Source: Dimorphilus gyrociliatus
Taxonomy: Eukaryota > Animalia > Annelida
DNA length: 64,000 nucleotides
Reading direction: 5' to 3'
NCBI GenBank assembly: GCA_904063045.1
Contig: CAJFCJ010000011.1
Span: forward strand, 744,001-808,000
The translations under genes and the position numbers were made by a program. A model generated the notes under the pieces. That model made no database searches and was not told the origin of the DNA. It saw only the letters and a list, made by a program, of their open reading frames with translations. This document shows, in pieces, positions 2,939-49,899 of this stretch. Within the stretch, counting starts at the first letter, position 1; the number at the start of each line of letters is the position of its first letter.

Positions 2939-5587
2939 TACGAATTCAATAGTTTTCATTATTAGCCAATAGATGGAAAACACTATTATCTCGATTTTAG
3001 AGTGAATCGCAGAAGAAAAATTCTCCAATATCCTTGTTATATTTAATGATACCTAATGCCGTTGTGTAAACCTGATTAGTAATTCAAAACACAGATTCTT
3101 AAGTTTTCTATGTGATTTATCCGACACGATCAACATTTGTAATACTCCCTAGTTTTTTATAAGAGAAATTTAACGTTTTAAGTTGATATTAAAATTGCTA
3201 AATTTATTAATTAAGGGAAAAATTATTTTGTAACGCTTTCAAATTAGAAAGAAGTTTCTATCGCGTACTCAATTGATTATTGAACACAGAGAATTGCGAA
3301 CAGTTACAATGGAGTATCGGAATTAAATAGGCAATGGAAGAATTAAAAGAGTAATTAAATTAGACCCTTCGCACTCTTGCAAACTTTTCTCTAACCTTTG
3401 CCTCTTTAATGAGGTCGACGTAGTCATACGAGAGCCTTTGCATTGCGTGAGACGTCATTGCAAATCTTACATGAGAAATATTCAGTTTTCTACTCTGCGA
3501 CGATTGTTTTCAGCACAAACATTTTTACATTCGTCGGGCGTAGAGCAATTATGGGGCGTTAATTGGTAACTGGAGATAGAATTTAGTCTAATTGAAGCAG
3601 AGTGCGGGGGAACAATATCTGTATTGCTGTTTCGATTCCGTAATTTAAACGGTCCGTCTAATGAAAATACGCGAGTTGAATAACGAGAATAAATTGCTTG
3701 GCGGAACGATGGAGAATTTCAATAATTATCGCCTGCAAATTGCTCGGGTATTGTGCTTACTCCGAAACCTACCGATTGTCTAATTGAGTAGTCATTTCCG
3801 CATCCGTTGGCCATTTCGATCGTTTTGTTAGTCGCACGTGCCGTCGTTGATAAGTGTTTATTATTTATTTGGATAAGAGATTAATAGAAAATAATTCAAT
3901 TTCGAAATATTTTTAATTAACTTTAGATATTTCAATAACTAGCATAAGTTTGTTGAATAATTAAACCAATTAGAAGAGCGCTAACAACAATAGCGTAGTG
4001 CAACAATTGAAAAATGAACAATTAGCGTTTCTTTAATGAGGGTGGGGCCACACAGTTTGTCGTTCGGTTTCCTTTCATCCTTTTTTCTCTTTTTTTTGTT
4101 TCACTCCCTTCCTTCGAAAGCTTAATACTCACATGTAAAAGTATAGTTTCGATGAATACTTGTATAAACTTGTAAGTTTTTTTTTATAATATGTGTAAAT
4201 CGTACTCTTTATCTATTATACCTATTATATGTAGATTTCACAGCATTTGTATTTTTATATTTTTATGCTTAGAAAATGTATCAAAAAGCATAGCATAGAA
4301 GGTATTCTACAATTCTTTCTATAGTTAACGCCTTCGACGACGCGCCGATAATCGGAAAGTGTTTAAAGCTTTCGACGCCCGTAGGCAGTAGTTTTATTAA
4401 GATCGTTTGCGCAAGTGGTGGAGAGAAACGCATTTTGGAGAGACGCTCTAGGCGTTTTTTGCAGACTGCGCTAGTATTTTATGACGGCTTCGTTATAATT
4501 ACTCGTCGTATACAAAACGTCATGGTCTTTATCGAATTACTGCTGAGATTGTCGCTAGAGAATTTGCTTTTTCCACTTCAATTATAAATTTAGGAGGACG
4601 ACGGGTAAAAATTTGGTCTAATTGACGGTTTACTCTCACCCCAACACCTGCCTACCAACACCCACAGCGATTACCGCCCACCGCCCACTCGCTTGAGCAA
4701 GCAGCAAATATGCACCACTCATTATCTCATGATCTCTCCTCAAGCAGACGTAACTGTTATGTTACGGTTTGCTTCGCTAATGGACTCTTGCTGCGCAAGT
4801 ATGAAGGACCTACCGTGTCAACTTTCCACTTCTATTTCTATTATACGCAACTGAAGGAAGCTAAGGAAGCCGTGTAACATAGACTGTATACAGAAAGCGT
4901 TTACAATTAATTCGTTATTTAAACGAGTAATTATTTGATGAAGGCTGTTAAGTGTTAAATTAGTACGAAACTCGACGCTTCCACGCCCTTTTTCATTACG
5001 CTTTTTTGCATACAAACGCTAGTATTTTATTTCTCTTTGAACGACGTCCTTAGTGAGTGTTCTCGGCAAAGAACTAACTCTTAAAAATTACAAACGTCCC
5101 AACATCTCCGCTTAGACATGTTCAAACGTGTTCAACGAGCTAGTTCAAAGTGTGAATCCTAAACGCTTTTGAATAGGTGTACAATGGAGACTAATGGCGT
5201 CAAGGCATCCCTGAGGCTTTTCAAATTTTATTCGCGCATAAAATCTTCCGATAGCTCGGTAGATGGCTCTGGCACCAGTTGACGATAACCAATAAGCTTT
5301 CGAGAACTGTAGAATAATTATGTGAGATGATGAAAGTAGTTGGACGCTGATTGGCAGGCAATGTTGGAAATATTTTGATCACTTTATTGCAGCACTGACT
5401 ACATCCCGTTTGCACGCAGTCGCCGATTTTAAAAGAGACGTTGAAGAGGAGAATACTATAATTATATAATTAATTTATTTATTTTGTGCTTAAAGTTGAT
5501 ATTAAGACCTTTATATCAAGAAGTATCAAAACGTATTCAGTATTTAATGCAGTATATATGAATTTCTTCATTTGAATTTAAATTATA

Positions 5588-40259: not shown

Positions 40260-40664
40260 CTCCTTTTATCACAGATAATGGCTTCTTTCATTTAATTTAA
40301 TATTTTTTTAATACGGAAAAGAATTTATTTCTAATTAATTACTCATTCCTTTTAAACAATTTTAATGCAATTATTCCCGGAAAGAAGAAAACGATGAAGT
40401 ATAGTAGAAAAAGCATTTTTGTTATTTCTGTTTTTTTTGTTGGTGCATTAAGATTTTCTTATACTTCTTGATACAGCAGCGACATTTGTTATCGACGTCA
40501 AAAAAGGATGAAAAGGTTAAATTTGATGAGAAAGTAAGAAATTCAAGACAAATATCATGTATTTTAAGTATCATTTTCTGCATTAATATTTGAAAACCGT
40601 ATTTGTTTCTAATACAATATACATGTATATGTATTTATATATATTAAGGTGTTATCATAAAGAT

Positions 40665-43600
40665 TTAATTGAATAGAGAATTAACTGAAGCACCCTGAAA
40701 AGTAATAAATGTTTAGTACGAAATAAAGAATTGTATATTTTACAAACCGGTAGGGAATAGACAAAAAGAAGAATGAAAATTAATAGTAATATTATAACAA
40801 TAGCAGTAATGAAATACCACTTGTAACTTTTCCATATTATATGCTTTAAAGATTTCCAAGGTGAAGTAAACCATAAAAATGATGTAGCTGGTCGATTGGG
40901 CTTTTCAAGCTTAGGCCTTTGATTCGGTTCGTCCTGACCACGACCAGCAGGACAATCTTGAAATTCCTTTTCTGATAAGAGTTCTATCTGCATTTCGATT
41001 TTTCCAGACAGTGACTTTTTACCATCTTTTTCATTATATACTGGCCAAAAGCCGGATAAACGCTTTTGCTCGAAAAGTGAAATTCTTTTTTGTTGTTTTT
41101 CTACACTGTATATGCAAGAAAGAATAGTAAAAAAGGTTATTTCTTACGGTAAAATTTACTCATTTTGCGTTTTCAATTGCCCAATATTACATTTACGTTG
41201 TGATTTTGCTGGCTTTATCATGTCATTCAAATTTAGCTCTAGTGTTCCTAAAAAGTCATCGCTACTAAAATTATCATTATCCCAGACCTGAAGAATAAGA
41301 GTTGGGGGAACCATAATTTCTGATTCGTTTAAACTCCAAAAGTGATCTTTCTTTTTAACACACACAAGCTCTTCAGCCGGCATGTAATCGAAAGGAAAAA
41401 CCATTCTCCAGTTGAAGTTTCCTTCTCCGTCCAATGATCGGTAATGAACATCGGTCGATTGCTTATCATCAATATCTTTTATCCATCCTTTGACATAAAT
41501 GTCGCTCATTTTTTCACCAGTTATAGATGTTTCGTCTAATACAACCTCTTTCGTGTTCCAAATTACAACTCTTATTTCAAATCTGTAAAAATACGAATAA
41601 TAAAAATGCCTTCTAAAAACAACTTTCTACTTTTTTGGTTTGCGTGATGTAATGTCTAATGCTGGAGGTACTCCATTATCAAGGGGAAACATATCAACAA
41701 AAAGTTGTAATTTGCCTTGTTCAATACCGGGCTGAAAAAAATTTCGTTAATATCAGTAAATTTTTATACAAATTGTACTTGAAGTGGACAATATAAGGAT
41801 CTGGTTTCAACATGTTCGGGGACGAAAAAAAACTTCTTTTTCTCAGCCAAAAAATGTAGCAAGTGAAGAGCTAATCGTTCTTTAGGTGGTCCTAAATGCT
41901 TATGAAGGATCATAGAATTCTCTGAAATGTTTATAATTTTAACAAAAGCATTAGCTTAAAAAAGTATACCAAAATTTCCTAATTGGAAAGTGCTATGTCC
42001 GATTTCAACTGTTGGATTATCAATCGAATTTGAAAACAAAGGATCATTTAAGCCTGCTGAAATGCAATAGCTTTTAAGTATATCAGTAGGTTTCAGAGAA
42101 TCTCTCCATTGGTTTGGACCAGACCTATAAATATACAATCATTAATGGCATAGAGTATTTTTTAATGAAAAGTATTCACGTGCAGTAGGTCTTAGCGAGA
42201 CCTACAGTTGTCTTGTATTTGCTCAAAAGTCGATTCTCTAAATCAATTGTTGTTTCTCCAATAACGTCGTCATTTGAAACTAAATCAAAATCTTTCACTT
42301 TGATAATAACATCTTTTTCAACTGGTATATTTGCTTTTAATTCAAAAAGACAGCCAAAAGTAGGATTAACAGAATTTGGAATAAAGGAATCTCTGTTATT
42401 GACTTTCTTTTTTCCAATTTTTATGGATATATATGGGTCAGCCTAAAATTAAGAATAATAAAAAAAGGAATTAGAGAATTCAGACCAAACCATTCCATTT
42501 GAGTCTTTAGGTTGAAGATCAAATGCCTTAATTACATAAATTCGTATTAAGTATTCTTTCGGGCTAAAATCGGGAACATTGCTTAGAACTTTCTCTGGTA
42601 TCTCTTCATTTGGATTACTTGGTAATGGATACACAAAAATATTTCCTTTAAATTGCCCAGCTGTACTGCTTTCTTCGTCTAGATTTTTGCCATGTTGCAA
42701 ATTAAAAGTGTCACAATAGTCAGTAAACTTTTCAAACATAGGAACTTTCTCCAATTCGGTAGTATATATTTCAATGGTACTGTAACCTAAATCCAAGTAA
42801 TGTTTTGCTTTTTTCAAGTCACCAAGAGAAGCATAGTACTTCGACCACCAGTCTATATTTTCTTCCCATAAATCGAAATACTGCAAGATAACTATATTTT
42901 TGGAAAGTTTATCAAAAAATAGAGAATGCAGTTGAACCTCGTTTTTGTTCAAAGATTGATCATCATCGGAAGTTTGTTTTTCTTTATGTACATTTAATGA
43001 TGCTATATTTTCTTCAAAGGATGCTGACAGTAATGGTTGCTTTGTAAAGAATATGTTAGATGGTTAAAAAGAAATTTATAATTATATACAAGAAACAGAA
43101 AACAGAAAGTGTCAAAGCATTTTACCTTAGTTCTTTTCTATACAACACAAGACAAAAAATAAAGTATATATATAAAAAATTCTGATTAAATATTTACTTT
43201 TTTTGAATATAGTTTTGGTTGATCAATTGTATCCATAGCAGTGTTAAGTATACCTAGAAAGAAAAAGCTTTTCAGTTTCAATCACAATTTCATAAGGGAT
43301 TAAATGAAAAAGAAAATCTGATTAATGAGAGTAAAGTTTTGAAGAAGACTTCTTTTTTTTTGACTAACCGGTCATACCAACGATAATCGTTTCAGAATCG
43401 TCGGAAACAGCACTTTCTAGAAAATTATTCAATTTCGTTATGTTTTTAAACTAAATATGCTCACCCTCATCATTTATATCAGAAAGGTTTTGATCATTCT
43501 GATACTTTCTTTGATATTTCTCAAAAGAAGAAACCGTATGCATTCCTACTCTTGGCTTTCTTCCAAATTGCCTATTATCTCGAACAATTATATTCAAAGG

Positions 43601-46600
43601 CGGTAGATATAACTCTTCTTTTGGAAGCATCTGAAAAAAGTCTTTTAAGAGCAATTTCTTCAATATATCTCAACATACTATATCGAAAAATATCGTGCAC
43701 TCTTGAAAATTCGGGTTTTTTTTAATATTTTTTATCACTGGTGACTTTTGAACATGTCCACCAATTTCAAATTCAATAGATGGAGAGGTTACGTTTGAAA
43801 ACTGATATTTTTTCATATTTCTCAAACCCAAACATAATATTTCAATACCAGTACGTTGAAGCTCTGGACGAACTTCAGGGGGAACAGTGTAAATGTCGCC
43901 CATTTTTGGTGGAGTACTGGGTAGTATATTTCCATCCATCTGCGAAAGACCCTTTAACTCTATCTATTTTGTATGATATTTGTACCTGTAGTAACTCAAA
44001 GGCAGCCAATAATTCACCCCCATCTTGATTGCCTTTTCTTATGTCGAACCATTGTAAAGACACTGGTTCATAGCTCTCGTCAACTTTTAATTTAACTTGA
44101 GGTGTCGCCATTGATCTACCGAGAAATTCAGGAGACCCCTAAAATATTTCATCAGATGAATACTCTCAGATATAAAAAGTGCATTAAGCTTACTATCAGA
44201 TCATTATCGAAGAATTCTATTGCTATTAAAGGTGGTTTATTATTTATTTGACTTGGATGACCATGAATTATTATGTTGTCAAATATAATTGTTTGATCCC
44301 AAGTTGGGCAAAGAGTTTTCTCCAGTTTTTTAGTTTCATCGGAATAATTCATGAAAGAAACACGAGCAAATGGATCTAAAATTATCGTATGAGAAACGTT
44401 CAGAAAAATTTTTAGTTACCAGAAAGTCCGTTCGAATCACCGGCTGAAAGATTTCTTGCTTGATAAATATAAGCCCGTAGTTGGTATTTTTTAAATTCTG
44501 AAAAGCTTTATGTGATTGTGTTTTACAATAATTTATTGAATACCTTTGCAATTTAAAAACATTCTTGGTGCTGCCAGTTTTTCTTTTGATTTCTTTTCCT
44601 TTAACAATATAAATTTATGATATAAACGTTCGAAAGATTTTTGATAATTCTCACCTCATCGCTTTTAAATGAAAATATGCAGGGTTTATCGTTTTTGGAA
44701 TTTTTGAGTTGTCTGTGCCACCGTCGTCTTCTAACCATGTCTAGCTTCCTTTCTACATGATGAAATTTCATAGTAAACGTAGGTGCATATTCCCATCCTT
44801 CAGAATCTACTTTCGCTTTTTCAGTTTTAGACTGAGTATGTGTTTTACTGAATGCACGAGTTCTCATCCATCTTCGTCTTCTGCATAGATGATACATTTT
44901 TTCCACTGGTCCCCAGCCACCTATAGATATCTCAATGCTGTATTCCCAACCATCATCATCCACTGCTTTGTTTTTGTCTATGCTCCATTGATTTTTCCAT
45001 TCCCAACCGTCAGATAGGACGACATCTTCTTTTCCTTCAGCTTTATCTCCTTTCTAAATTAATGGAAGTAATAAAACATAATTTTAACATAAAAAACTAA
45101 CCACATCGATCCAAGGACTGTTTTGGTCAGGGCTCCATTTACCCCCAATAGTTCTCGATTGTAATTCATAAACTTCTTCAATATAACTTTTGTGGCCAGA
45201 GTCTTTATCATAAAGCATACTTAGCTCTGGACTTATGTACCAGTCACCAACCCATGACCAACCATCAGACACTATAAAATCATCCTTTTTTAGCTTTACT
45301 TTCCCGTTGTTATCAGAAAATGATGGGCGAGTTGAAAATTTTCCAGACCATGTATTCATTATTTTTACTTGATTTTCATAAGTTTCTGCAAAAAGTGATA
45401 TTTCACCGTCTTGATTGTCAGTCCAGGAACTTTCATATCTAGCCAAACCAAACCACAACTTTAACCTAAGTTGAGCTGGTATTTCAAATCGCTTTTCATT
45501 CTCCATTTTCTCACCAGGAAATTTTAAATGAATTGTTTCTAAATTATTACAATATTTTCCTCTATAATCTGGGTTAGGAGAGAAAAATATGTCGTTGGGC
45601 GGAATTCGGCAAAAGGCTTTTCGCTCATTATCTGATATCATCCATATAATAATATCAGGAATACTACTTTGAGGTTCTAAGGCTATATTTTTAAGTTGTT
45701 CAAAATAGTCCTCAAGTTCGCTGATTGCTTGTTCTGGATTATCTGCCGTCTTTCTTAGGGTAATAGCCTGTTCTCTAACATCTGTCAATACTCTCTGTCT
45801 GTGAATTCGTATTTCACGATCCAAGTTGTTTTCTACTGTCTGTCCTTTTATTATGTCTGGTAAGGGCTTTTGACAATCAAGAATAACTCTATCAAGGGTT
45901 ATTATTATCAACTGTGCAAGCTCTTTAAAAAAATAAATTAATACATATTTATAAATGTAATTATAGTATTGTTACCTCTTTCACTTAGTTTAGCTTTAAA
46001 AGCTCTTCTAATCTGTTCGAGGTTTGACTCTAGGTTATGCAATGTCTTAAGAATGGAATTAAGGCTTTCCAATCGGAAAGAAATATCTTCCCAATGACAG
46101 TCTACGGAAACACATGGTTTTGTACTACTCCAAGGAAGAAAGTGGTAATAAGATCCATCAAAAACAGGATTTGTTATTTGTGTTGTTGATGCACTTGGTG
46201 GTACAGTTTCATCTAATTTGTTTCCGTAATTTCCTATTGAAACTTCGAATTCCACTGGAGCATCATCGATATATATCAGGGAAGCATTATAAAATATGGC
46301 ATTGAGCTTAAACTTCCGACGAGCCATAAATTTTTCAACATTGTACAAGCTCTCTTGGGAAATTTCTTGCGATGGAACGTCTGGACTCTCTTCAATTGCC
46401 ATTTTTAACTCAAGAAGAGCTCTCCCTCTAAAGCAGACTCCTTCGCCCTTTAAAAAAAGTCAGAGATAAAATGTACGGCTAATAATATTTACAATTTAAT
46501 ATTATGTAGTACTTTTCCATCGTTCATGTAATCATATTTATTTCCAAGACAACTGAATTCTCTAGGTGATCCATAAAAATTAACAAATGAAGGCCCAAAC

Positions 46601-49600
46601 GTTGGCAGAAAACCTATATAACATTTTTTCTTTATTATTTGAGAATTTTATTTAAATTGAAGCAACAGCATTATTTTTAGAAAATTAAATGTCAAAATAT
46701 ATACACCCAATCTGTTAATTATCTACAACTACTTCTTGTTATATGCGTGCTGAAAATAATATATATGGTCACTCTTCTAGTTTAAGTGAATATATAAAAC
46801 AAGCGGGCTTGCAAGTTAGAAGATAAAAATGAAAATCTCTCTTGACAGGTTTGTATATTTTTTCTGTTTTCAAATACATTTTAGTAGCTTTTACCTTCTA
46901 TTCCTGGCAATATATTAATATATTATAAAACCAGACATTCAGTTCAAAATTTTTTAATCGAAATTAAATGTCAATCTACAACAAATATTCACCGATATCA
47001 CCAGGAGAAGAAATATGTGAAAGTTGAATGAAAGCAGTTCCAACATAATCATCTTCTGTAAGCGCATCCCTGTTAGTAGGTTAGTAAAAAACATGAAATG
47101 AATAAGTAGGTGTAAATTATCTAATTTCAGATTTTGAAAATGTTAATTGACTAAGACAGGCTCGTCTGGTGCAATAATATTGAGAATTAATTAAAACCAA
47201 AAAAAATTTCCCCTATTCAGCATAGCGTTCAGATAATTATGCTAAATTCACAAACCATAAAGATCTCCCAGCTTTGAAATATCTGATAATCTTAGGAATG
47301 TTGTACAAATTGTGTCTTCGTCAGATAGACGATCCCTAAAATAGAGAAATCGCAGAAAACACTTTGTAAAAGTTTACTTACCAGTCTCTAATTTGCAGTC
47401 GTATCCTTTCACACATCGACGGAAACTATAGAAAAAACTCACTAAAAATTAATTATGAAGGTATATAATGTCACCCTTAATCCTAAGTTAAGCTCCTCAT
47501 TAAATTCAGGGTTGTCATTTTTTTGAATAATTTGTGACCTAACTTCTGATCCGGCAAAAGAAAAAACAAAATATGGATCGACTCTACCTCCTTTTTTTTG
47601 TTTTGAGCCAAAAAATTTCTTTACGTCTCCAACCAAATCACAATCCACTGAAAAAAGACACTTATGTTTTACTTGAAAAGAATAATGTTTGGTTTATTAC
47701 TTATTGGTAAATCTTCGCATCGGTATAAATTTAAGGTAAACTTTGCCGGTCGCAAATGCACTCCAGACGGTTTTAATAAATTTGACTCAATATCTTCTTC
47801 ATCATTATTTAGATCAAAATTTGGTGCAGTATCACCTGGTCCAAGAACAGTTGCACAAATTTTAATATAACCGCTGGCCCCTGAATTTAGATCTTCAGGG
47901 TTGCTAAGAAGTAACCATTTATTTATAAGAGAGTGATCTTGGGCTTCATAAATCATTCCTATGTCACACTGAAATTGATAACAGTAATGCTAGCTGAGAA
48001 ATAAGCTGTATGTACTTCTCAAATACTTACCTTAAAGTTTCCGATAAGAGAGTCTGATCGTAACTTTTTAGAATGAAAAACTTGGAAGTCTAATATTTCA
48101 TCGAACAACTCTCCGGGCGAACAAAAGAAATTGAAAAAAAATACTTCATTCCAAAATGGTGAGTTTGTAGACTTCTTTATTCTTGTTTGTTTCGTTTGTT
48201 GAAAACAGGTAATTCTGGTTACTGGGTCAATGTTTCCTCCTTGTAGTTGACGTCCTTCAATAATTTTAATCCGAATCTTAAATGCAATTTAGATAAAATT
48301 AGTTATAAAAATAATAATATTCTAAGAACATTGACATTTTGCCAAGAGCCAAGAAATAAAGCTTTTAGCACTAACAATTCTTTAAAATATATTATGATCA
48401 ACCATAAACGAAAAGATTTTTTATTATCTATAAACGTGTCTCTTCTATTTCCTTCAAGACATCAATCACCATAGAAAAAGATGAAACAAGCTATTAAAAA
48501 TTTTTGGTATTAGATTTTGATCACACAAGCAAAGTATTGTTCAAAATCAATTATTATATTTAGCTGGGCATACTAGAAATATACAATTGATCATATAATT
48601 TCAAATAAAGAAATTCTCAACCTGAAAGTCTTGAGATTTATTTGACAAGCGGCCTCGAATTTTTCTACTTTTTGGTTTTTTTCTTTTGGTGATACTATTA
48701 TTCATATCAGCTCGTGAGTCGTATTCGATTGTGTCATTTTCATCTGCCAGTTCATTATCTTCCTCTGAAGAAACATTTATTGTAAATATTACATATACTC
48801 AGACAATAAAGGTACATATTAGTAAAGTAGTTATAACTCAGAAAGCGCTTAGAGTGCTTTGATAGCTAATTACCTTGTCTAGAGTCAACAACGTCGCCTG
48901 TTTCATTATTTTCAATATTCTTCTCAGCTGATATTGGCGCTTCATAAAGTATTTGAATTGATACCGAGCACTAAAAATAACCTTATTATTTAAACTGTAA
49001 ATTCAAACAACAATAGCTACATCTGTTTTTCTGTTTTTTTTATCCATCATTAACAAATTTCTTTCAAGTTTCGGATTCTGCATCAAAGCATTCACTGCCA
49101 ACTTTGTTTGGCAAACTAATCTACAATATGAAAATGTTTGAGCTTAATTATCAATTGTGAAAGTCTTTGCTAGCATGTACAATTAAATTCGTCTTTATAA
49201 TACTTGTAATATATAGAGAAGGGATAAGAAATGTAGTTAGTCTCAAATATAACATAATAAATTATTATGCATATATGTAAATAAATATTTTTCTAGACCT
49301 CAAAAATATACAAAATTTGTGGCAGGTTAACCTAAATTGATCAAAATAGCCTATTTGGGAACACCCTAATAAGTACACTTTGCAAATAGTATTTGTACAA
49401 GCACCAGTCCGTCTGTAACAAGGCCTATAGAATTTCGACTCACGCGAGCAAAAATTTCATAGGATTAAATAAACTACTGAAATTTTATCCTGAAGTTAAA
49501 TAAGTAATAATTCGAAAGACTAGACCTATTTCTGCCAATCTTTTCATGATCCATTAATTTTATCGTAATGTTTTCATTGCTTTTCAGCGGACCTGGTACA

Positions 49601-49899
49601 ACTTCAAGGCGAACATTCTGTAATCAAAGTTAAATTCTAAACTACGTTCATTTCGTGCGCTCTTCCTCAAAAAAGAAGTGCCCTTATAATTACCTCATTC
49701 CAAACAGGGTTTAAATCATTTTCTTTCACTGATGTTTTATCTTTACAGCCTGAAATATATCACAATATCATTTTGAAATATGTTTGTGGTCGAAAATATG
49801 ATAACCTCTAAATTCGCAGACAACAAATGGATCTGTTTTCCCCAATGTCTCTATATCGGGAACGTTTGTCGCACTGATGATTTTAATCAAGAGAGCCAT
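40665..49899 (-). CDS. Type-1 ferlin (myoferlin/dysferlin-like): multiple C2 domains, FerI/FerA/FerB, DysF, C-terminal TM helix
   Basis: ATG at 49899 ([15 protein letters not shown]...KTDPF). C2[10 protein letters not shown]; [10 protein letters not shown]; GFLPTFGP; DysF GWEY...RRRRW; IDWWSKY; [17 protein letters not shown]; [17 protein letters not shown]; [12 protein letters not shown] plus TM; last exon GASVNSLFN* (40694-40665). Confidence 0.93.
46993..47335 (-). other. Pair of homologous, mutually exclusive ferlin C2C exons: A 47335-47256 (80 nt) and B 47069-46993 (77 nt)
   Basis: A encodes (W)[26 protein letters not shown](G); B encodes (W)[25 protein letters not shown](G). Both are phase 2 in and phase 1 out with canonical AG/GT, so joining both shifts the frame. 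Confidence 0.85.

What the first reader, a model, noticed from the sequence alone, without database searches (positions are those of the whole stretch)
46993..47335. Duplicated, mutually exclusive exons swap the Ca2+-binding loop 3 of the ferlin C2C domain
Seen: after the constitutive exon ending ...IRD-TG (47382) come exon A (80 nt, [28 protein letters not shown]) and exon B (77 nt, [27 protein letters not shown]), then GFLPTFGP (from 46613). Both have canonical splice sites and the same phases, and both are open and keep the D-x-D-x5-D pattern; including both or neither breaks the frame. The flanking introns (186 and 379 nt) are far longer than the gene's typical 50-60 nt. Established: this loop supplies Ca2+ and phospholipid ligands in C2 domains; dysferlin has alternative C2A first exons, but I know of no described mutually exclusive C2C loop-3 exons in ferlins. 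Inference: one gene makes two Ca2+/lipid-tuned ferlins, perhaps covering muscle-repair and secretory roles that vertebrates split between paralogues.
Basis: partly seen in the sequence, partly recalled or inferred. Interest (0 to 1): 0.82.

Follow-up and report, generated by a model that had tools for sequence, protein, structure and literature searches.

The report
Swappable calcium-loop exons in worm ferlin
This small marine worm's ferlin gene (a membrane-fusion and repair protein) has two neighbouring copies of one short exon and puts exactly one into each message, giving two versions of a calcium- and membrane-binding loop; molluscs, other annelids, ribbon worms and rotifers carry the same swappable exon set, and I found no paper describing it.

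Summary
Exon A (47256-47335, 80 nt) and exon B (46993-47069, 77 nt) lie on the minus strand. They share the same phase and have AG/GT splice sites. Including both or neither shifts the frame into stop codons. Spliced contigs of one public run show all four predicted junctions, at similar depth. The gene is a dysferlin/myoferlin-type ferlin. The swapped block aligns with the myoferlin C2C L3 loop from D446, plus the next strand.

- The calcium ligands (D, S/T, D) are kept in both exons. The differences lie at the membrane-touching tip (exon A keeps the near-universal Arg; exon B has Ala, seen in none of 158 other variants) and in the strand (Cys versus the usual Gly).
- The pair is not peculiar to this worm. 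Tandem same-phase copies sit at the same place in Paralvinella (4), Pinctada (3), Tubulanus (2) and Rotaria (3). RefSeq isoforms of oysters, mussels and octopus swap exactly this block.

I found one copy only in a shrimp, a flatworm, an orthonectid, Nematostella and deuterostome isoform sets. No paper found describes this. Different Ca2+/lipid tuning is inferred, and tissue use is unknown. The scan has noted many other mutually exclusive exon pairs elsewhere in this genome.

The parts
40655..49899 (-). Ferlin gene (dysferlin/myoferlin type), approximate extent
   Evidence: Pfam: FerI 47672-47956, FerA+FerB 45087-45911, C2 41159-41509, Ferlin_C 40658-40993. Eleven constitutive introns between 44498 and 49020 are confirmed by spliced contigs, and the frame stays open through either exon. 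The putative start ORF at 49768-49899 is not verified.
47382..47425 (-). Constitutive 44-nt exon, [14 protein letters not shown] plus TG; it supplies the first L3 aspartate (myoferlin D444) and two bases of the Trp codon
   Evidence: joint 47425|47475 and both downstream joints.
47336..47381 (-). 46-nt intron between the constitutive exon and exon A
   Evidence: GTAAGT...TTTTAG; joint in X2.
47256..47335 (-). Exon A, 80 nt: [26 protein letters not shown]; keeps Arg at the L3 tip and has Cys in place of the usual strand Gly
   Evidence: one contig carries both joints, depth 289; HMM E 1.2e-11.
47070..47255 (-). 186-nt intron between A and B; its last 21 nt (47070-47090) hold two (T)ACTAAC motifs, 15 and 7 nt before the AG
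   Evidence: Of 14 introns, only this one has such a tandem motif.
46993..47069 (-). Exon B, 77 nt: [25 protein letters not shown]; canonical xVGT strand, but Ala where 151 of 158 other variants have Arg or Lys
   Evidence: joints at depth 521 and 219; aligns to myoferlin chain 9h6x_D residues 497-519; E 5e-13.
46614..46992 (-). 379-nt intron between exon B and the next constitutive exon; no third exon copy in it
   Evidence: no HMM hit better than E 81 in this locus besides A and B.
46513..46613 (-). Constitutive 101-nt exon, (G)[19 protein letters not shown]...

Best explanation
Exons A and B are the two surviving members, in this compact genome, of an old cluster of mutually exclusive exons in the spiralian dysferlin/myoferlin-type ferlin gene.

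Shown:
- Each mature mRNA carries one of the two exons.
- Double inclusion or double skipping breaks the frame. Such messages would presumably be removed by nonsense-mediated decay (inferred).
- The swapped 25-26 residues run from the second aspartate of Ca2+-binding loop L3 of the C2C domain, through the next beta strand, to the turn before GFLPTFGP.
- Both versions keep the Ca2+ ligands.

Inferred:
- Both isoforms still bind Ca2+.
- They probably differ in how strongly, and to which lipids, the Ca2+-loaded C2C tip docks on membranes.
- Exon A keeps the conserved tip Arg (myoferlin R447, a membrane contact) and is about two charges more basic overall.
- Exon B replaces that Arg with Ala and keeps the canonical Gly strand.
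- Exon choice is probably regulated. The tandem UACUAAC at exon B's acceptor is a candidate site for a branch-point or STAR-type RNA-binding protein.
For: - Anatomy and frame logic.
- All four junctions appear in spliced contigs of run X2, at depths of the same order as the flanking constitutive contigs (289 for A; 219-521 for B; 621-934 for flanks).
- Ferlin identity.
- Mapping to L3: plus PMC12264198. That paper gives the L3 ligands as D444, W445 carbonyl, D446, T449 and D452, and the membrane tip as R447, L448 and K450.
- AF2 models of oyster C2C with either exon type give the same sandwich. The block forms loop 94-100, strand 101-109 and a turn, with similar pLDDT.
- Antiquity: tandem same-phase 77-nt copies with AG/GT sites lie between the same flanking exons in Paralvinella (4), Pinctada (3), Tubulanus (2) and Rotaria (3).
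- Ostrea edulis RefSeq isoforms P0179 and P0198 are 99.1% identical and differ only in this block.
- Magallana has 3 versions, Mytilus 2 and Octopus 2.
- Exon B scores higher against Tubulanus copy 2, Pinctada copy 2 and the Macrostomum exon than against exon A. Exon A is closest to the single Intoshia exon.
- All 14 genomic copies keep D at positions 1 and 7.
- The Arg position is R or K in 151 of 158 other variants and never Ala.
Against: - The RNA evidence comes from one run of unknown library type, as assembled contigs. It gives no tissue, stage or quantitative information, and one junction in that table was not shown, so rare A+B inclusion is not excluded.
- No binding or physiological data exist for any of these variants. 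The tuning idea rests on homology to human myoferlin.
- Orthology of exon A with particular copies in other phyla rests on 25 residues and is weak.
- Independent duplications in several phyla are not excluded.
- AF2 confidence in the block is moderate (71-89), and the alignment is dominated by Gly-type sequences.
Confidence: 0.8

Rival explanations
1. The two isoforms do not differ mainly in Ca2+ or lipid tuning. Instead they differ in contacts the C2C strand and turn make with neighbouring ferlin domains or partner proteins, or in folding and stability.
For: More than half of the swapped block is the strand and the following turn, not the loop. The class-defining change is Gly versus Cys/Ser/Ala in the strand. 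C2C is part of a rigid multi-domain core with many interfaces (PMC12264198).
Against: The block also contains all three membrane-contacting tip residues of L3, and Dimorphilus A and B differ at two of them (R/A, D/E). No interface data exist for these residues.
Confidence: 0.25
2. One reading: the two isoforms divide tissue roles (for example muscle membrane repair versus secretion) that vertebrates divide between paralogous ferlins.
For: Lineages with two ~50%-identical type-I ferlin paralogues (sea cucumbers, amphioxus, Nematostella) show only one core exon in their isoform sets or locus. Lineages with the exon cluster use splicing instead. Both isoforms are abundant in whole-animal RNA.
Against: There are no tissue-resolved data. 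The gastropod Babylonia has two genes as well. Vertebrate paralogues differ along their whole length, not only in this loop.
Confidence: 0.15
3. One of the two exons is a decaying duplicate that is spliced in only as noise.
For: Exon A has unusual residues (Glu at position 6, Cys at the Gly position) and exon B has a unique Ala at the Arg position.
Against: Both are open, keep the ligand aspartates and have good splice sites. Both junction pairs have contig depths of a third or more of the flanking exons. Multi-copy clusters with all copies intact occur in four phyla. Oyster copies are conserved copy by copy between Ostrea and Magallana.
Confidence: 0.04
4. The pair arose by a recent duplication inside the Dimorphilus lineage and is unrelated to the clusters in other phyla.
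For: Twenty-five residues cannot give a robust tree. Copy numbers differ among phyla (2-4).
Against: A and B are only 55% identical in DNA and 46% in protein. B is more similar to Gly-type copies of a nemertean, an oyster and a flatworm than to A, and A is closest to the Intoshia exon. The order, with non-Gly copies first and a Gly copy after them, recurs in Dimorphilus, Tubulanus, Pinctada, Paralvinella and Rotaria.
Confidence: 0.05

Closest known systems
RefSeq 'myoferlin-like' isoform sets of oysters, mussels and octopus (Ostrea edulis, Saccostrea echinata, Magallana gigas, Mytilus edulis, Octopus spp.)
   Same: Same gene family, same exon position and the same mutually exclusive swap of the block after IxDW. 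Ostrea isoforms P0179 and P0198 differ only there. Pinctada has three tandem same-phase genomic copies.
   Different: Three versions instead of two. They exist only as automatic annotation, and I found no paper discussing them. All listed molluscan versions keep the tip Arg that Dimorphilus exon B lacks.
Alternative splicing of human dysferlin (alternative first exon, exons 5a, 17 and 40a) and myoferlin
   Same: Ferlin isoform diversity that alters C2 domains or their linkers. Alternative splicing of DYSF exons 5, 17 and 40 is cited in PMC11171558.
   Different: These are alternative first exons or cassette exons, not mutually exclusive copies of a Ca2+-loop exon. Vertebrate and other deuterostome isoforms seen here share one core exon and vary only by an optional insert just after it.
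Myoferlin C2C domain, L3 loop (cryo-EM, PDB 9h6x and related; PMC12264198)
   Same: Exon B aligns to the chain 9h6x_D stretch DRLTKNDVVGTTYLHLSKIAASG. The D-W-D-x5-D ligand pattern is kept in both exons.
   Different: Myoferlin has one fixed loop with tip residues R, L, K. Dimorphilus has R, L, D (exon A) or A, L, E (exon B).
Mutually exclusive exon clusters made by tandem exon duplication in general (ion channels, Dscam and others; own knowledge)
   Same: Adjacent homologous exons of equal phase, one used per transcript, with frame incompatibility as a safeguard.
   Different: Here the target is a C2-domain Ca2+/lipid loop. I found no significant competing RNA pairing.
C. elegans synaptotagmin snt-1 A/B isoforms with alternative C2B-coding exons
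   Same: One gene yields two Ca2+-sensor C2 domains through alternative exons.
   Different: Different protein family and C2 domain. No paper on it was retrieved here, so this is a lead only.

Membership tests
Ferlin family, type I (dysferlin/myoferlin-like) | FerI, FerA and FerB motifs between C2 domains | tested here: met
   Pfam FerI 3.8e-17, FerB 1.4e-27; FerA 4e-07, which is below its curated cutoff.
Ferlin family, type I (dysferlin/myoferlin-like) | C-terminal Ferlin_C region with membrane anchor | tested here: met
   Pfam Ferlin_C 1.1e-21 at 40658-40993, followed by a hydrophobic stretch in the ORF.
Ferlin family, type I (dysferlin/myoferlin-like) | DysF domains | tested here: inconclusive
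   No Pfam hit at E <= 0.01 for the exon 44604-44963. That exon does carry repeated GWEY...RRRRW motifs, and the best named relatives are myoferlin/dysferlin-like proteins with PF06398 hits.
Mutually exclusive exon pair | Adjacent homologous exons with the same phase and usable splice sites | tested here: met
   80 and 77 nt, both entered after 2 and left after 1 codon base, AG/GT sites, 46% residue identity.
Mutually exclusive exon pair | Transcripts contain one or the other exon | tested here: met
   Four junctions appear in X2 contigs (up-A, A-down, up-B, B-down). No A-B joint is among the 15 listed, and one joint was not shown. The evidence comes from one run and from contigs only.
Mutually exclusive exon pair | Both or neither exon is incompatible with the protein | tested here: met
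   Both cases give a frameshift with stops in the next exon.
Ca2+-binding C2 domain, loop 3 | Acidic ligands D-x-D-x5-D at the positions of myoferlin D444, D446 and D452 | tested here: met
   Both exons keep D446 and D452 equivalents and S/T at 449. These residues are invariant or nearly invariant in 54 aligned C2C domains.
Ca2+-binding C2 domain, loop 3 | Actual Ca2+ and phospholipid binding by either variant | not testable with these tools
   Needs recombinant C2C-A and C2C-B.
Conserved spiralian exon cluster | Tandem copies at the same intron position in other phyla | tested here: met
   Paralvinella 4, Pinctada 3, Tubulanus 2, Rotaria 3. A single copy in Macrostomum, Intoshia, Halocaridina and Nematostella.
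Conserved spiralian exon cluster | One-to-one orthology of Dimorphilus A and B with particular copies elsewhere | tested here: inconclusive
   B clearly belongs to the Gly class. A is nearest to the Intoshia exon and Rotaria copy 2, but only 25 residues are available.

The most novel reading that the evidence does not exclude
An exon cluster dating back to early spiralians lets one ferlin gene make two to four C2C domains with the same Ca2+ site but different membrane-docking tips and strands. In Dimorphilus the canonical-looking exon B has uniquely lost the tip arginine, giving a Ca2+-binding but weakly membrane-docking ferlin. Its use would be switched by a STAR/QKI-type protein through the tandem UACUAAC at its acceptor. 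This would be a natural, genetically tractable series for dissecting how the C2C tip sets ferlin membrane binding.
Probability: 0.25. Interest if true: 0.65.

Novelty: new member of a known kind. Interest (0 to 1): 0.5.

Why it matters
Ferlins (dysferlin, myoferlin, otoferlin) are Ca2+-dependent membrane repair and fusion proteins linked to muscular dystrophy and deafness. The recent myoferlin structures show C2C loop L3 coordinating three Ca2+ ions and a phosphatidylserine while inserting its tip into the membrane.

A natural, conserved set of alternative versions of exactly this loop and the following strand offers ready-made variants for binding studies. It also shows that many invertebrates diversify ferlin function by splicing rather than, or as well as, by gene duplication.

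For annotation, the cluster is mishandled in some gene models. The Paralvinella and Rotaria predictions string two copies together. Ferlin sequences from spiralians should therefore be checked at this point.

Tried and rejected
- Exon A alone against PDB sequences gave no hit, and exon B only a weak one (E 1.3) that is nevertheless positionally exact.
- I looked for a third, decayed copy in the long Dimorphilus introns and for hidden copies in the single-copy loci with an exon HMM. There were none.
- I tested whether the best inverted repeat (exon A donor region against the region just upstream of the downstream acceptor, 17 of 20) could be a looping element. Seven of 200 dinucleotide shuffles do as well, so I do not count it.
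- Apparent isoform pairs in sea cucumbers, Nematostella, amphioxus and Babylonia turned out to be paralogues of 39-68% identity, not splice variants.
- Look-ups of Ostrea, Holothuria, Limulus and Diadema loci failed, because the isoform was not the longest product or the gene exceeded 100 kb. No deuterostome locus was therefore read as DNA.
- The worm's own annotated ferlin protein did not appear in either word search. The structure models were therefore made with oyster isoforms instead of the Dimorphilus sequences, which have no reference as spliced proteins.
- The coral metatranscriptome run X1 holds a 95-99% relative, but it covers only the first 12 nt of exon A, so no selection test on A or B was possible.
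That row is not used as evidence.

Full report
**What is in the sequence.** The window's minus strand between about 40.6 and 49.9 kb encodes a ferlin. Pfam finds FerI (47672-47956), FerA and FerB (45087-45911), a late C2 domain and the Ferlin_C end (40658-40993). The nearest named proteins are myoferlin-like and dysferlin-like proteins of invertebrates.

Earlier notes of this scan name the genome as the annelid Dimorphilus gyrociliatus. I did not verify that independently. The AT-rich sequence and ~50-nt introns fit the compact genome described in PMC7854359.

Directly after the FerI exon comes the C2C domain. Its third coding piece ends ...IRD plus TG at 47382. Exon A (47256-47335, 80 nt) and exon B (46993-47069, 77 nt) follow. 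The exon starting (G)FLPTFGP at 46613 comes next.

Both alternative exons have AG|G acceptors and G|GT donors and the same phases. Either one alone keeps the frame open over the 965-966 residues I assembled from junction-supported exons. Both together, or neither, shift the frame into stop codons.

**RNA evidence.** Only two public runs held this stretch. Run X2 has no library type on record, but it contains spliced contigs that are 99-100% identical to the window. They remove 11 constitutive introns of the gene at GT-AG borders.

The same run shows all four alternative junctions:
- 47382|47335 and 47256|46613, on one contig with depth 289.
- 47382|47069, at depth 521.
- 46993|46613, at depth 219.

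The short flanks (25-27 nt plus 2-5 ambiguous bases) are what a k=31 assembly graph produces at a bubble. Flanking constitutive contigs have depths of 621-934. In this whole-animal sample both forms are therefore major, although contig depth is a rough measure.

No A-to-B junction is among the 15 joints listed, and one joint was not displayed. Run X1, a coral metatranscriptome, contains a 95-99% identical relative. It covers only the first 12 nt of exon A, so it says nothing on selection.

**Where the swapped block sits.**
- Exon B aligns to the myoferlin chain 9h6x_D at residues 497-519, DRLTKNDVVGTTYLHLSKIAASG. This corresponds to D446 onward in the native numbering of PMC12264198.
- That paper reports that C2C loop L3 coordinates all three Ca2+ ions through D444, the W445 carbonyl, D446, T449 and D452.
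- It also reports that L3 touches the membrane with R447, L448 and K450, and that phosphatidylserine binds between L3 and L4.
- In the worm, D444 and most of the Trp codon lie in the constitutive exon.
- Exon A supplies D-R-L-S-D-E-D and exon B supplies D-A-L-T-E-D-D.
- The ligands are therefore the same in both, and the tip residues differ (R, L, D against A, L, E).
- AF2 models of the oyster C2C domain with a non-Gly exon (P0198) or a Gly exon (P0179) give the same beta sandwich. The block forms the loop (residues 94-100), the next strand (101-109) and a turn. Confidence is similar in both: pLDDT 77/87/74 against 77/89/71 per ten residues.

**How unusual the residues are.** I collected 158 distinct versions of this block from other animals.
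- The Arg position is R in 145 and K in 6, and never Ala. In this sample exon B is unique in lacking a basic tip residue, whereas exon A keeps it.
- The strand position is Gly in 117, Ala in 17, Ser in 15 and Cys in 9. Exon A has Cys.
- Counting all charged residues, exon A is about two charges more basic than exon B (direct reading of the sequences).
- Work on synaptotagmin C2B loops reports that small loop differences change fusion-pore behaviour through membrane affinity (PMC5905296, abstract). This makes a functional difference plausible but does not show one.

**The pair is old and widespread.** I fetched ferlin loci of other animals and searched between the conserved FPSMCE...D exon and the GFLPTFGP exon. 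All copies listed below have AG|G acceptors, in-phase GT donors and the two ligand aspartates.

| Animal | Copies | Lengths | Residues at the strand start |
|---|---|---|---|
| Paralvinella palmiformis (annelid) | 4 | 77 nt each | DDCVCSG, DDPVSMA, DDPVGAC, DDPAAVA |
| Pinctada imbricata (pearl oyster) | 3 | 83, 77, 77 nt | DDTISSA, DDYVGTH, DDTIGTS |
| Tubulanus polymorphus (nemertean) | 2 | 77 nt each | DDTMATA, DDPIGTA |
| Rotaria sordida (rotifer) | 3 | 77, 77, 65 or 80 nt | DDITCST, DDIVSRN, SDTIGVG |

In each case non-Gly copies come first and a Gly copy follows, as in Dimorphilus.

At the protein level:
- Ostrea edulis RefSeq isoforms P0179 and P0198 are 99.1% identical and differ only in this block.
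- Saccostrea, Magallana (three versions), Mytilus and Octopus (two versions each) show the same swap.
- Each oyster version is conserved between Ostrea and Magallana.

Only one copy was found in:
- the flatworm Macrostomum;
- the orthonectid Intoshia, whose exon resembles exon A;
- the shrimp Halocaridina;
- one Nematostella gene.

The RefSeq isoform sets of Ptychodera, sea urchins, Acanthaster, Anneissia, Branchiostoma, Lingula and Lineus all share one core exon. Seeming isoform pairs in sea cucumbers, Nematostella and amphioxus are paralogous genes.

Exon B scores higher against Tubulanus copy 2, Pinctada copy 2 and the Macrostomum exon than against exon A. Exon A is nearest to the Intoshia exon and Rotaria copy 2. 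A and B share only 55% of their bases. The duplication therefore long predates Dimorphilus. With 25 residues, however, I cannot prove one origin for all phyla.

**Mechanism.**
- Shown: one of the two exons is used per message, and frame incompatibility applies otherwise.
- Inferred: mis-spliced forms are cleared by nonsense-mediated decay. Both isoforms bind Ca2+ but differ in membrane docking or in contacts made by the strand.
- Possible control element: the intron before exon B ends in TTTTACTAACCTACTAACAG, with two branch-point or STAR-protein motifs 15 and 7 nt from the AG. Only 3 of the gene's 14 checked introns have any CTRAY in their last 45 nt, and none of the others has a tandem. This element was flagged separately by the scan (s1-083103). 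I did not test it beyond this count.
- A candidate looping stem between the exon A donor and the downstream acceptor region is no better than chance.

**Novelty and verdict.** Five full-text searches combining ferlin names, C2 domains and mutually exclusive exons returned no paper on this. The library lacks most subscription journals. The isoforms do exist in automatic RefSeq annotation for molluscs, and tandem-exon switching is a well-known mechanism. The scan has about 180 notes mentioning mutually exclusive exons; all eight shown are in this genome. I therefore class this as a new member of a known kind. It is solidly real, conserved and experimentally useful, but not a new principle.

The claims that the loop's Ca2+ chemistry is swapped and that the arrangement is unknown need the corrections above. 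The proposed division of labour between tissues remains untested.

Noticed in passing
window 47070-47090 (minus strand, just before exon B): Two (T)ACTAAC motifs lie 15 and 7 nt before the acceptor AG. Only 3 of 14 introns of this gene have any CTRAY in their last 45 nt, and none of the others has two. Paralvinella copy 2 also has ACTAAT right before its acceptor. This is a candidate branch-point or STAR/QKI-type control site, already flagged by the scan as s1-083103.
   Followed up: partly
Proteins P0166/P0362/P0369, P0171/P0376, P0169/P0332, P0278/P0441/P0442, P0177/P0404, P0428/P0429: Across deuterostomes, Lingula, oysters and octopus, isoforms of one gene differ by an optional short insert placed exactly between this exon and GFLPTFGP (for example GPED, GTYP, acidic stretches). 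The turn after the strand is thus a second, widespread hot spot of ferlin splicing. The vertebrate variation seen may correspond to the known dysferlin exon 17 cassette; I did not verify this.
   Followed up: partly
P0256 (Paralvinella) residues 440-580; P0300 (Rotaria) C2C region: Public gene models string two of the alternative exon copies together with translated intron between them. Spiralian ferlin models are therefore unreliable at this point.
   Followed up: partly
L007 (Intoshia linei) 4558-4634: The orthonectid Intoshia has a single exon at this place. It resembles Dimorphilus exon A (13 of 25 residues; MLRLSDLSDLGD against [12 protein letters not shown]) rather than the canonical Gly type.
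   Followed up: partly
window 45485-47777, run X1: A coral metatranscriptome holds spliced ferlin contigs 95-99% identical to the window. A close relative of this worm was therefore living in that coral sample. The one change in the constitutive exon (47384) is synonymous.
   Followed up: no
window 48277-48621 (minus strand): A third long intron (345 nt) lies in the N-terminal part of the gene. An unspliced contig (48330-48651, depth 19) and a loose end at 48578 do not match anywhere else in the window. A further alternative exon or retained intron is possible.
   Followed up: no
window 46993-47069: Exon B is covered by two contigs of different depth (521 and 219). It also has a second in-phase GT 9 nt before its donor, which would delete the three residues G-D-I. 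Whether that donor is used is unknown.
   Followed up: no
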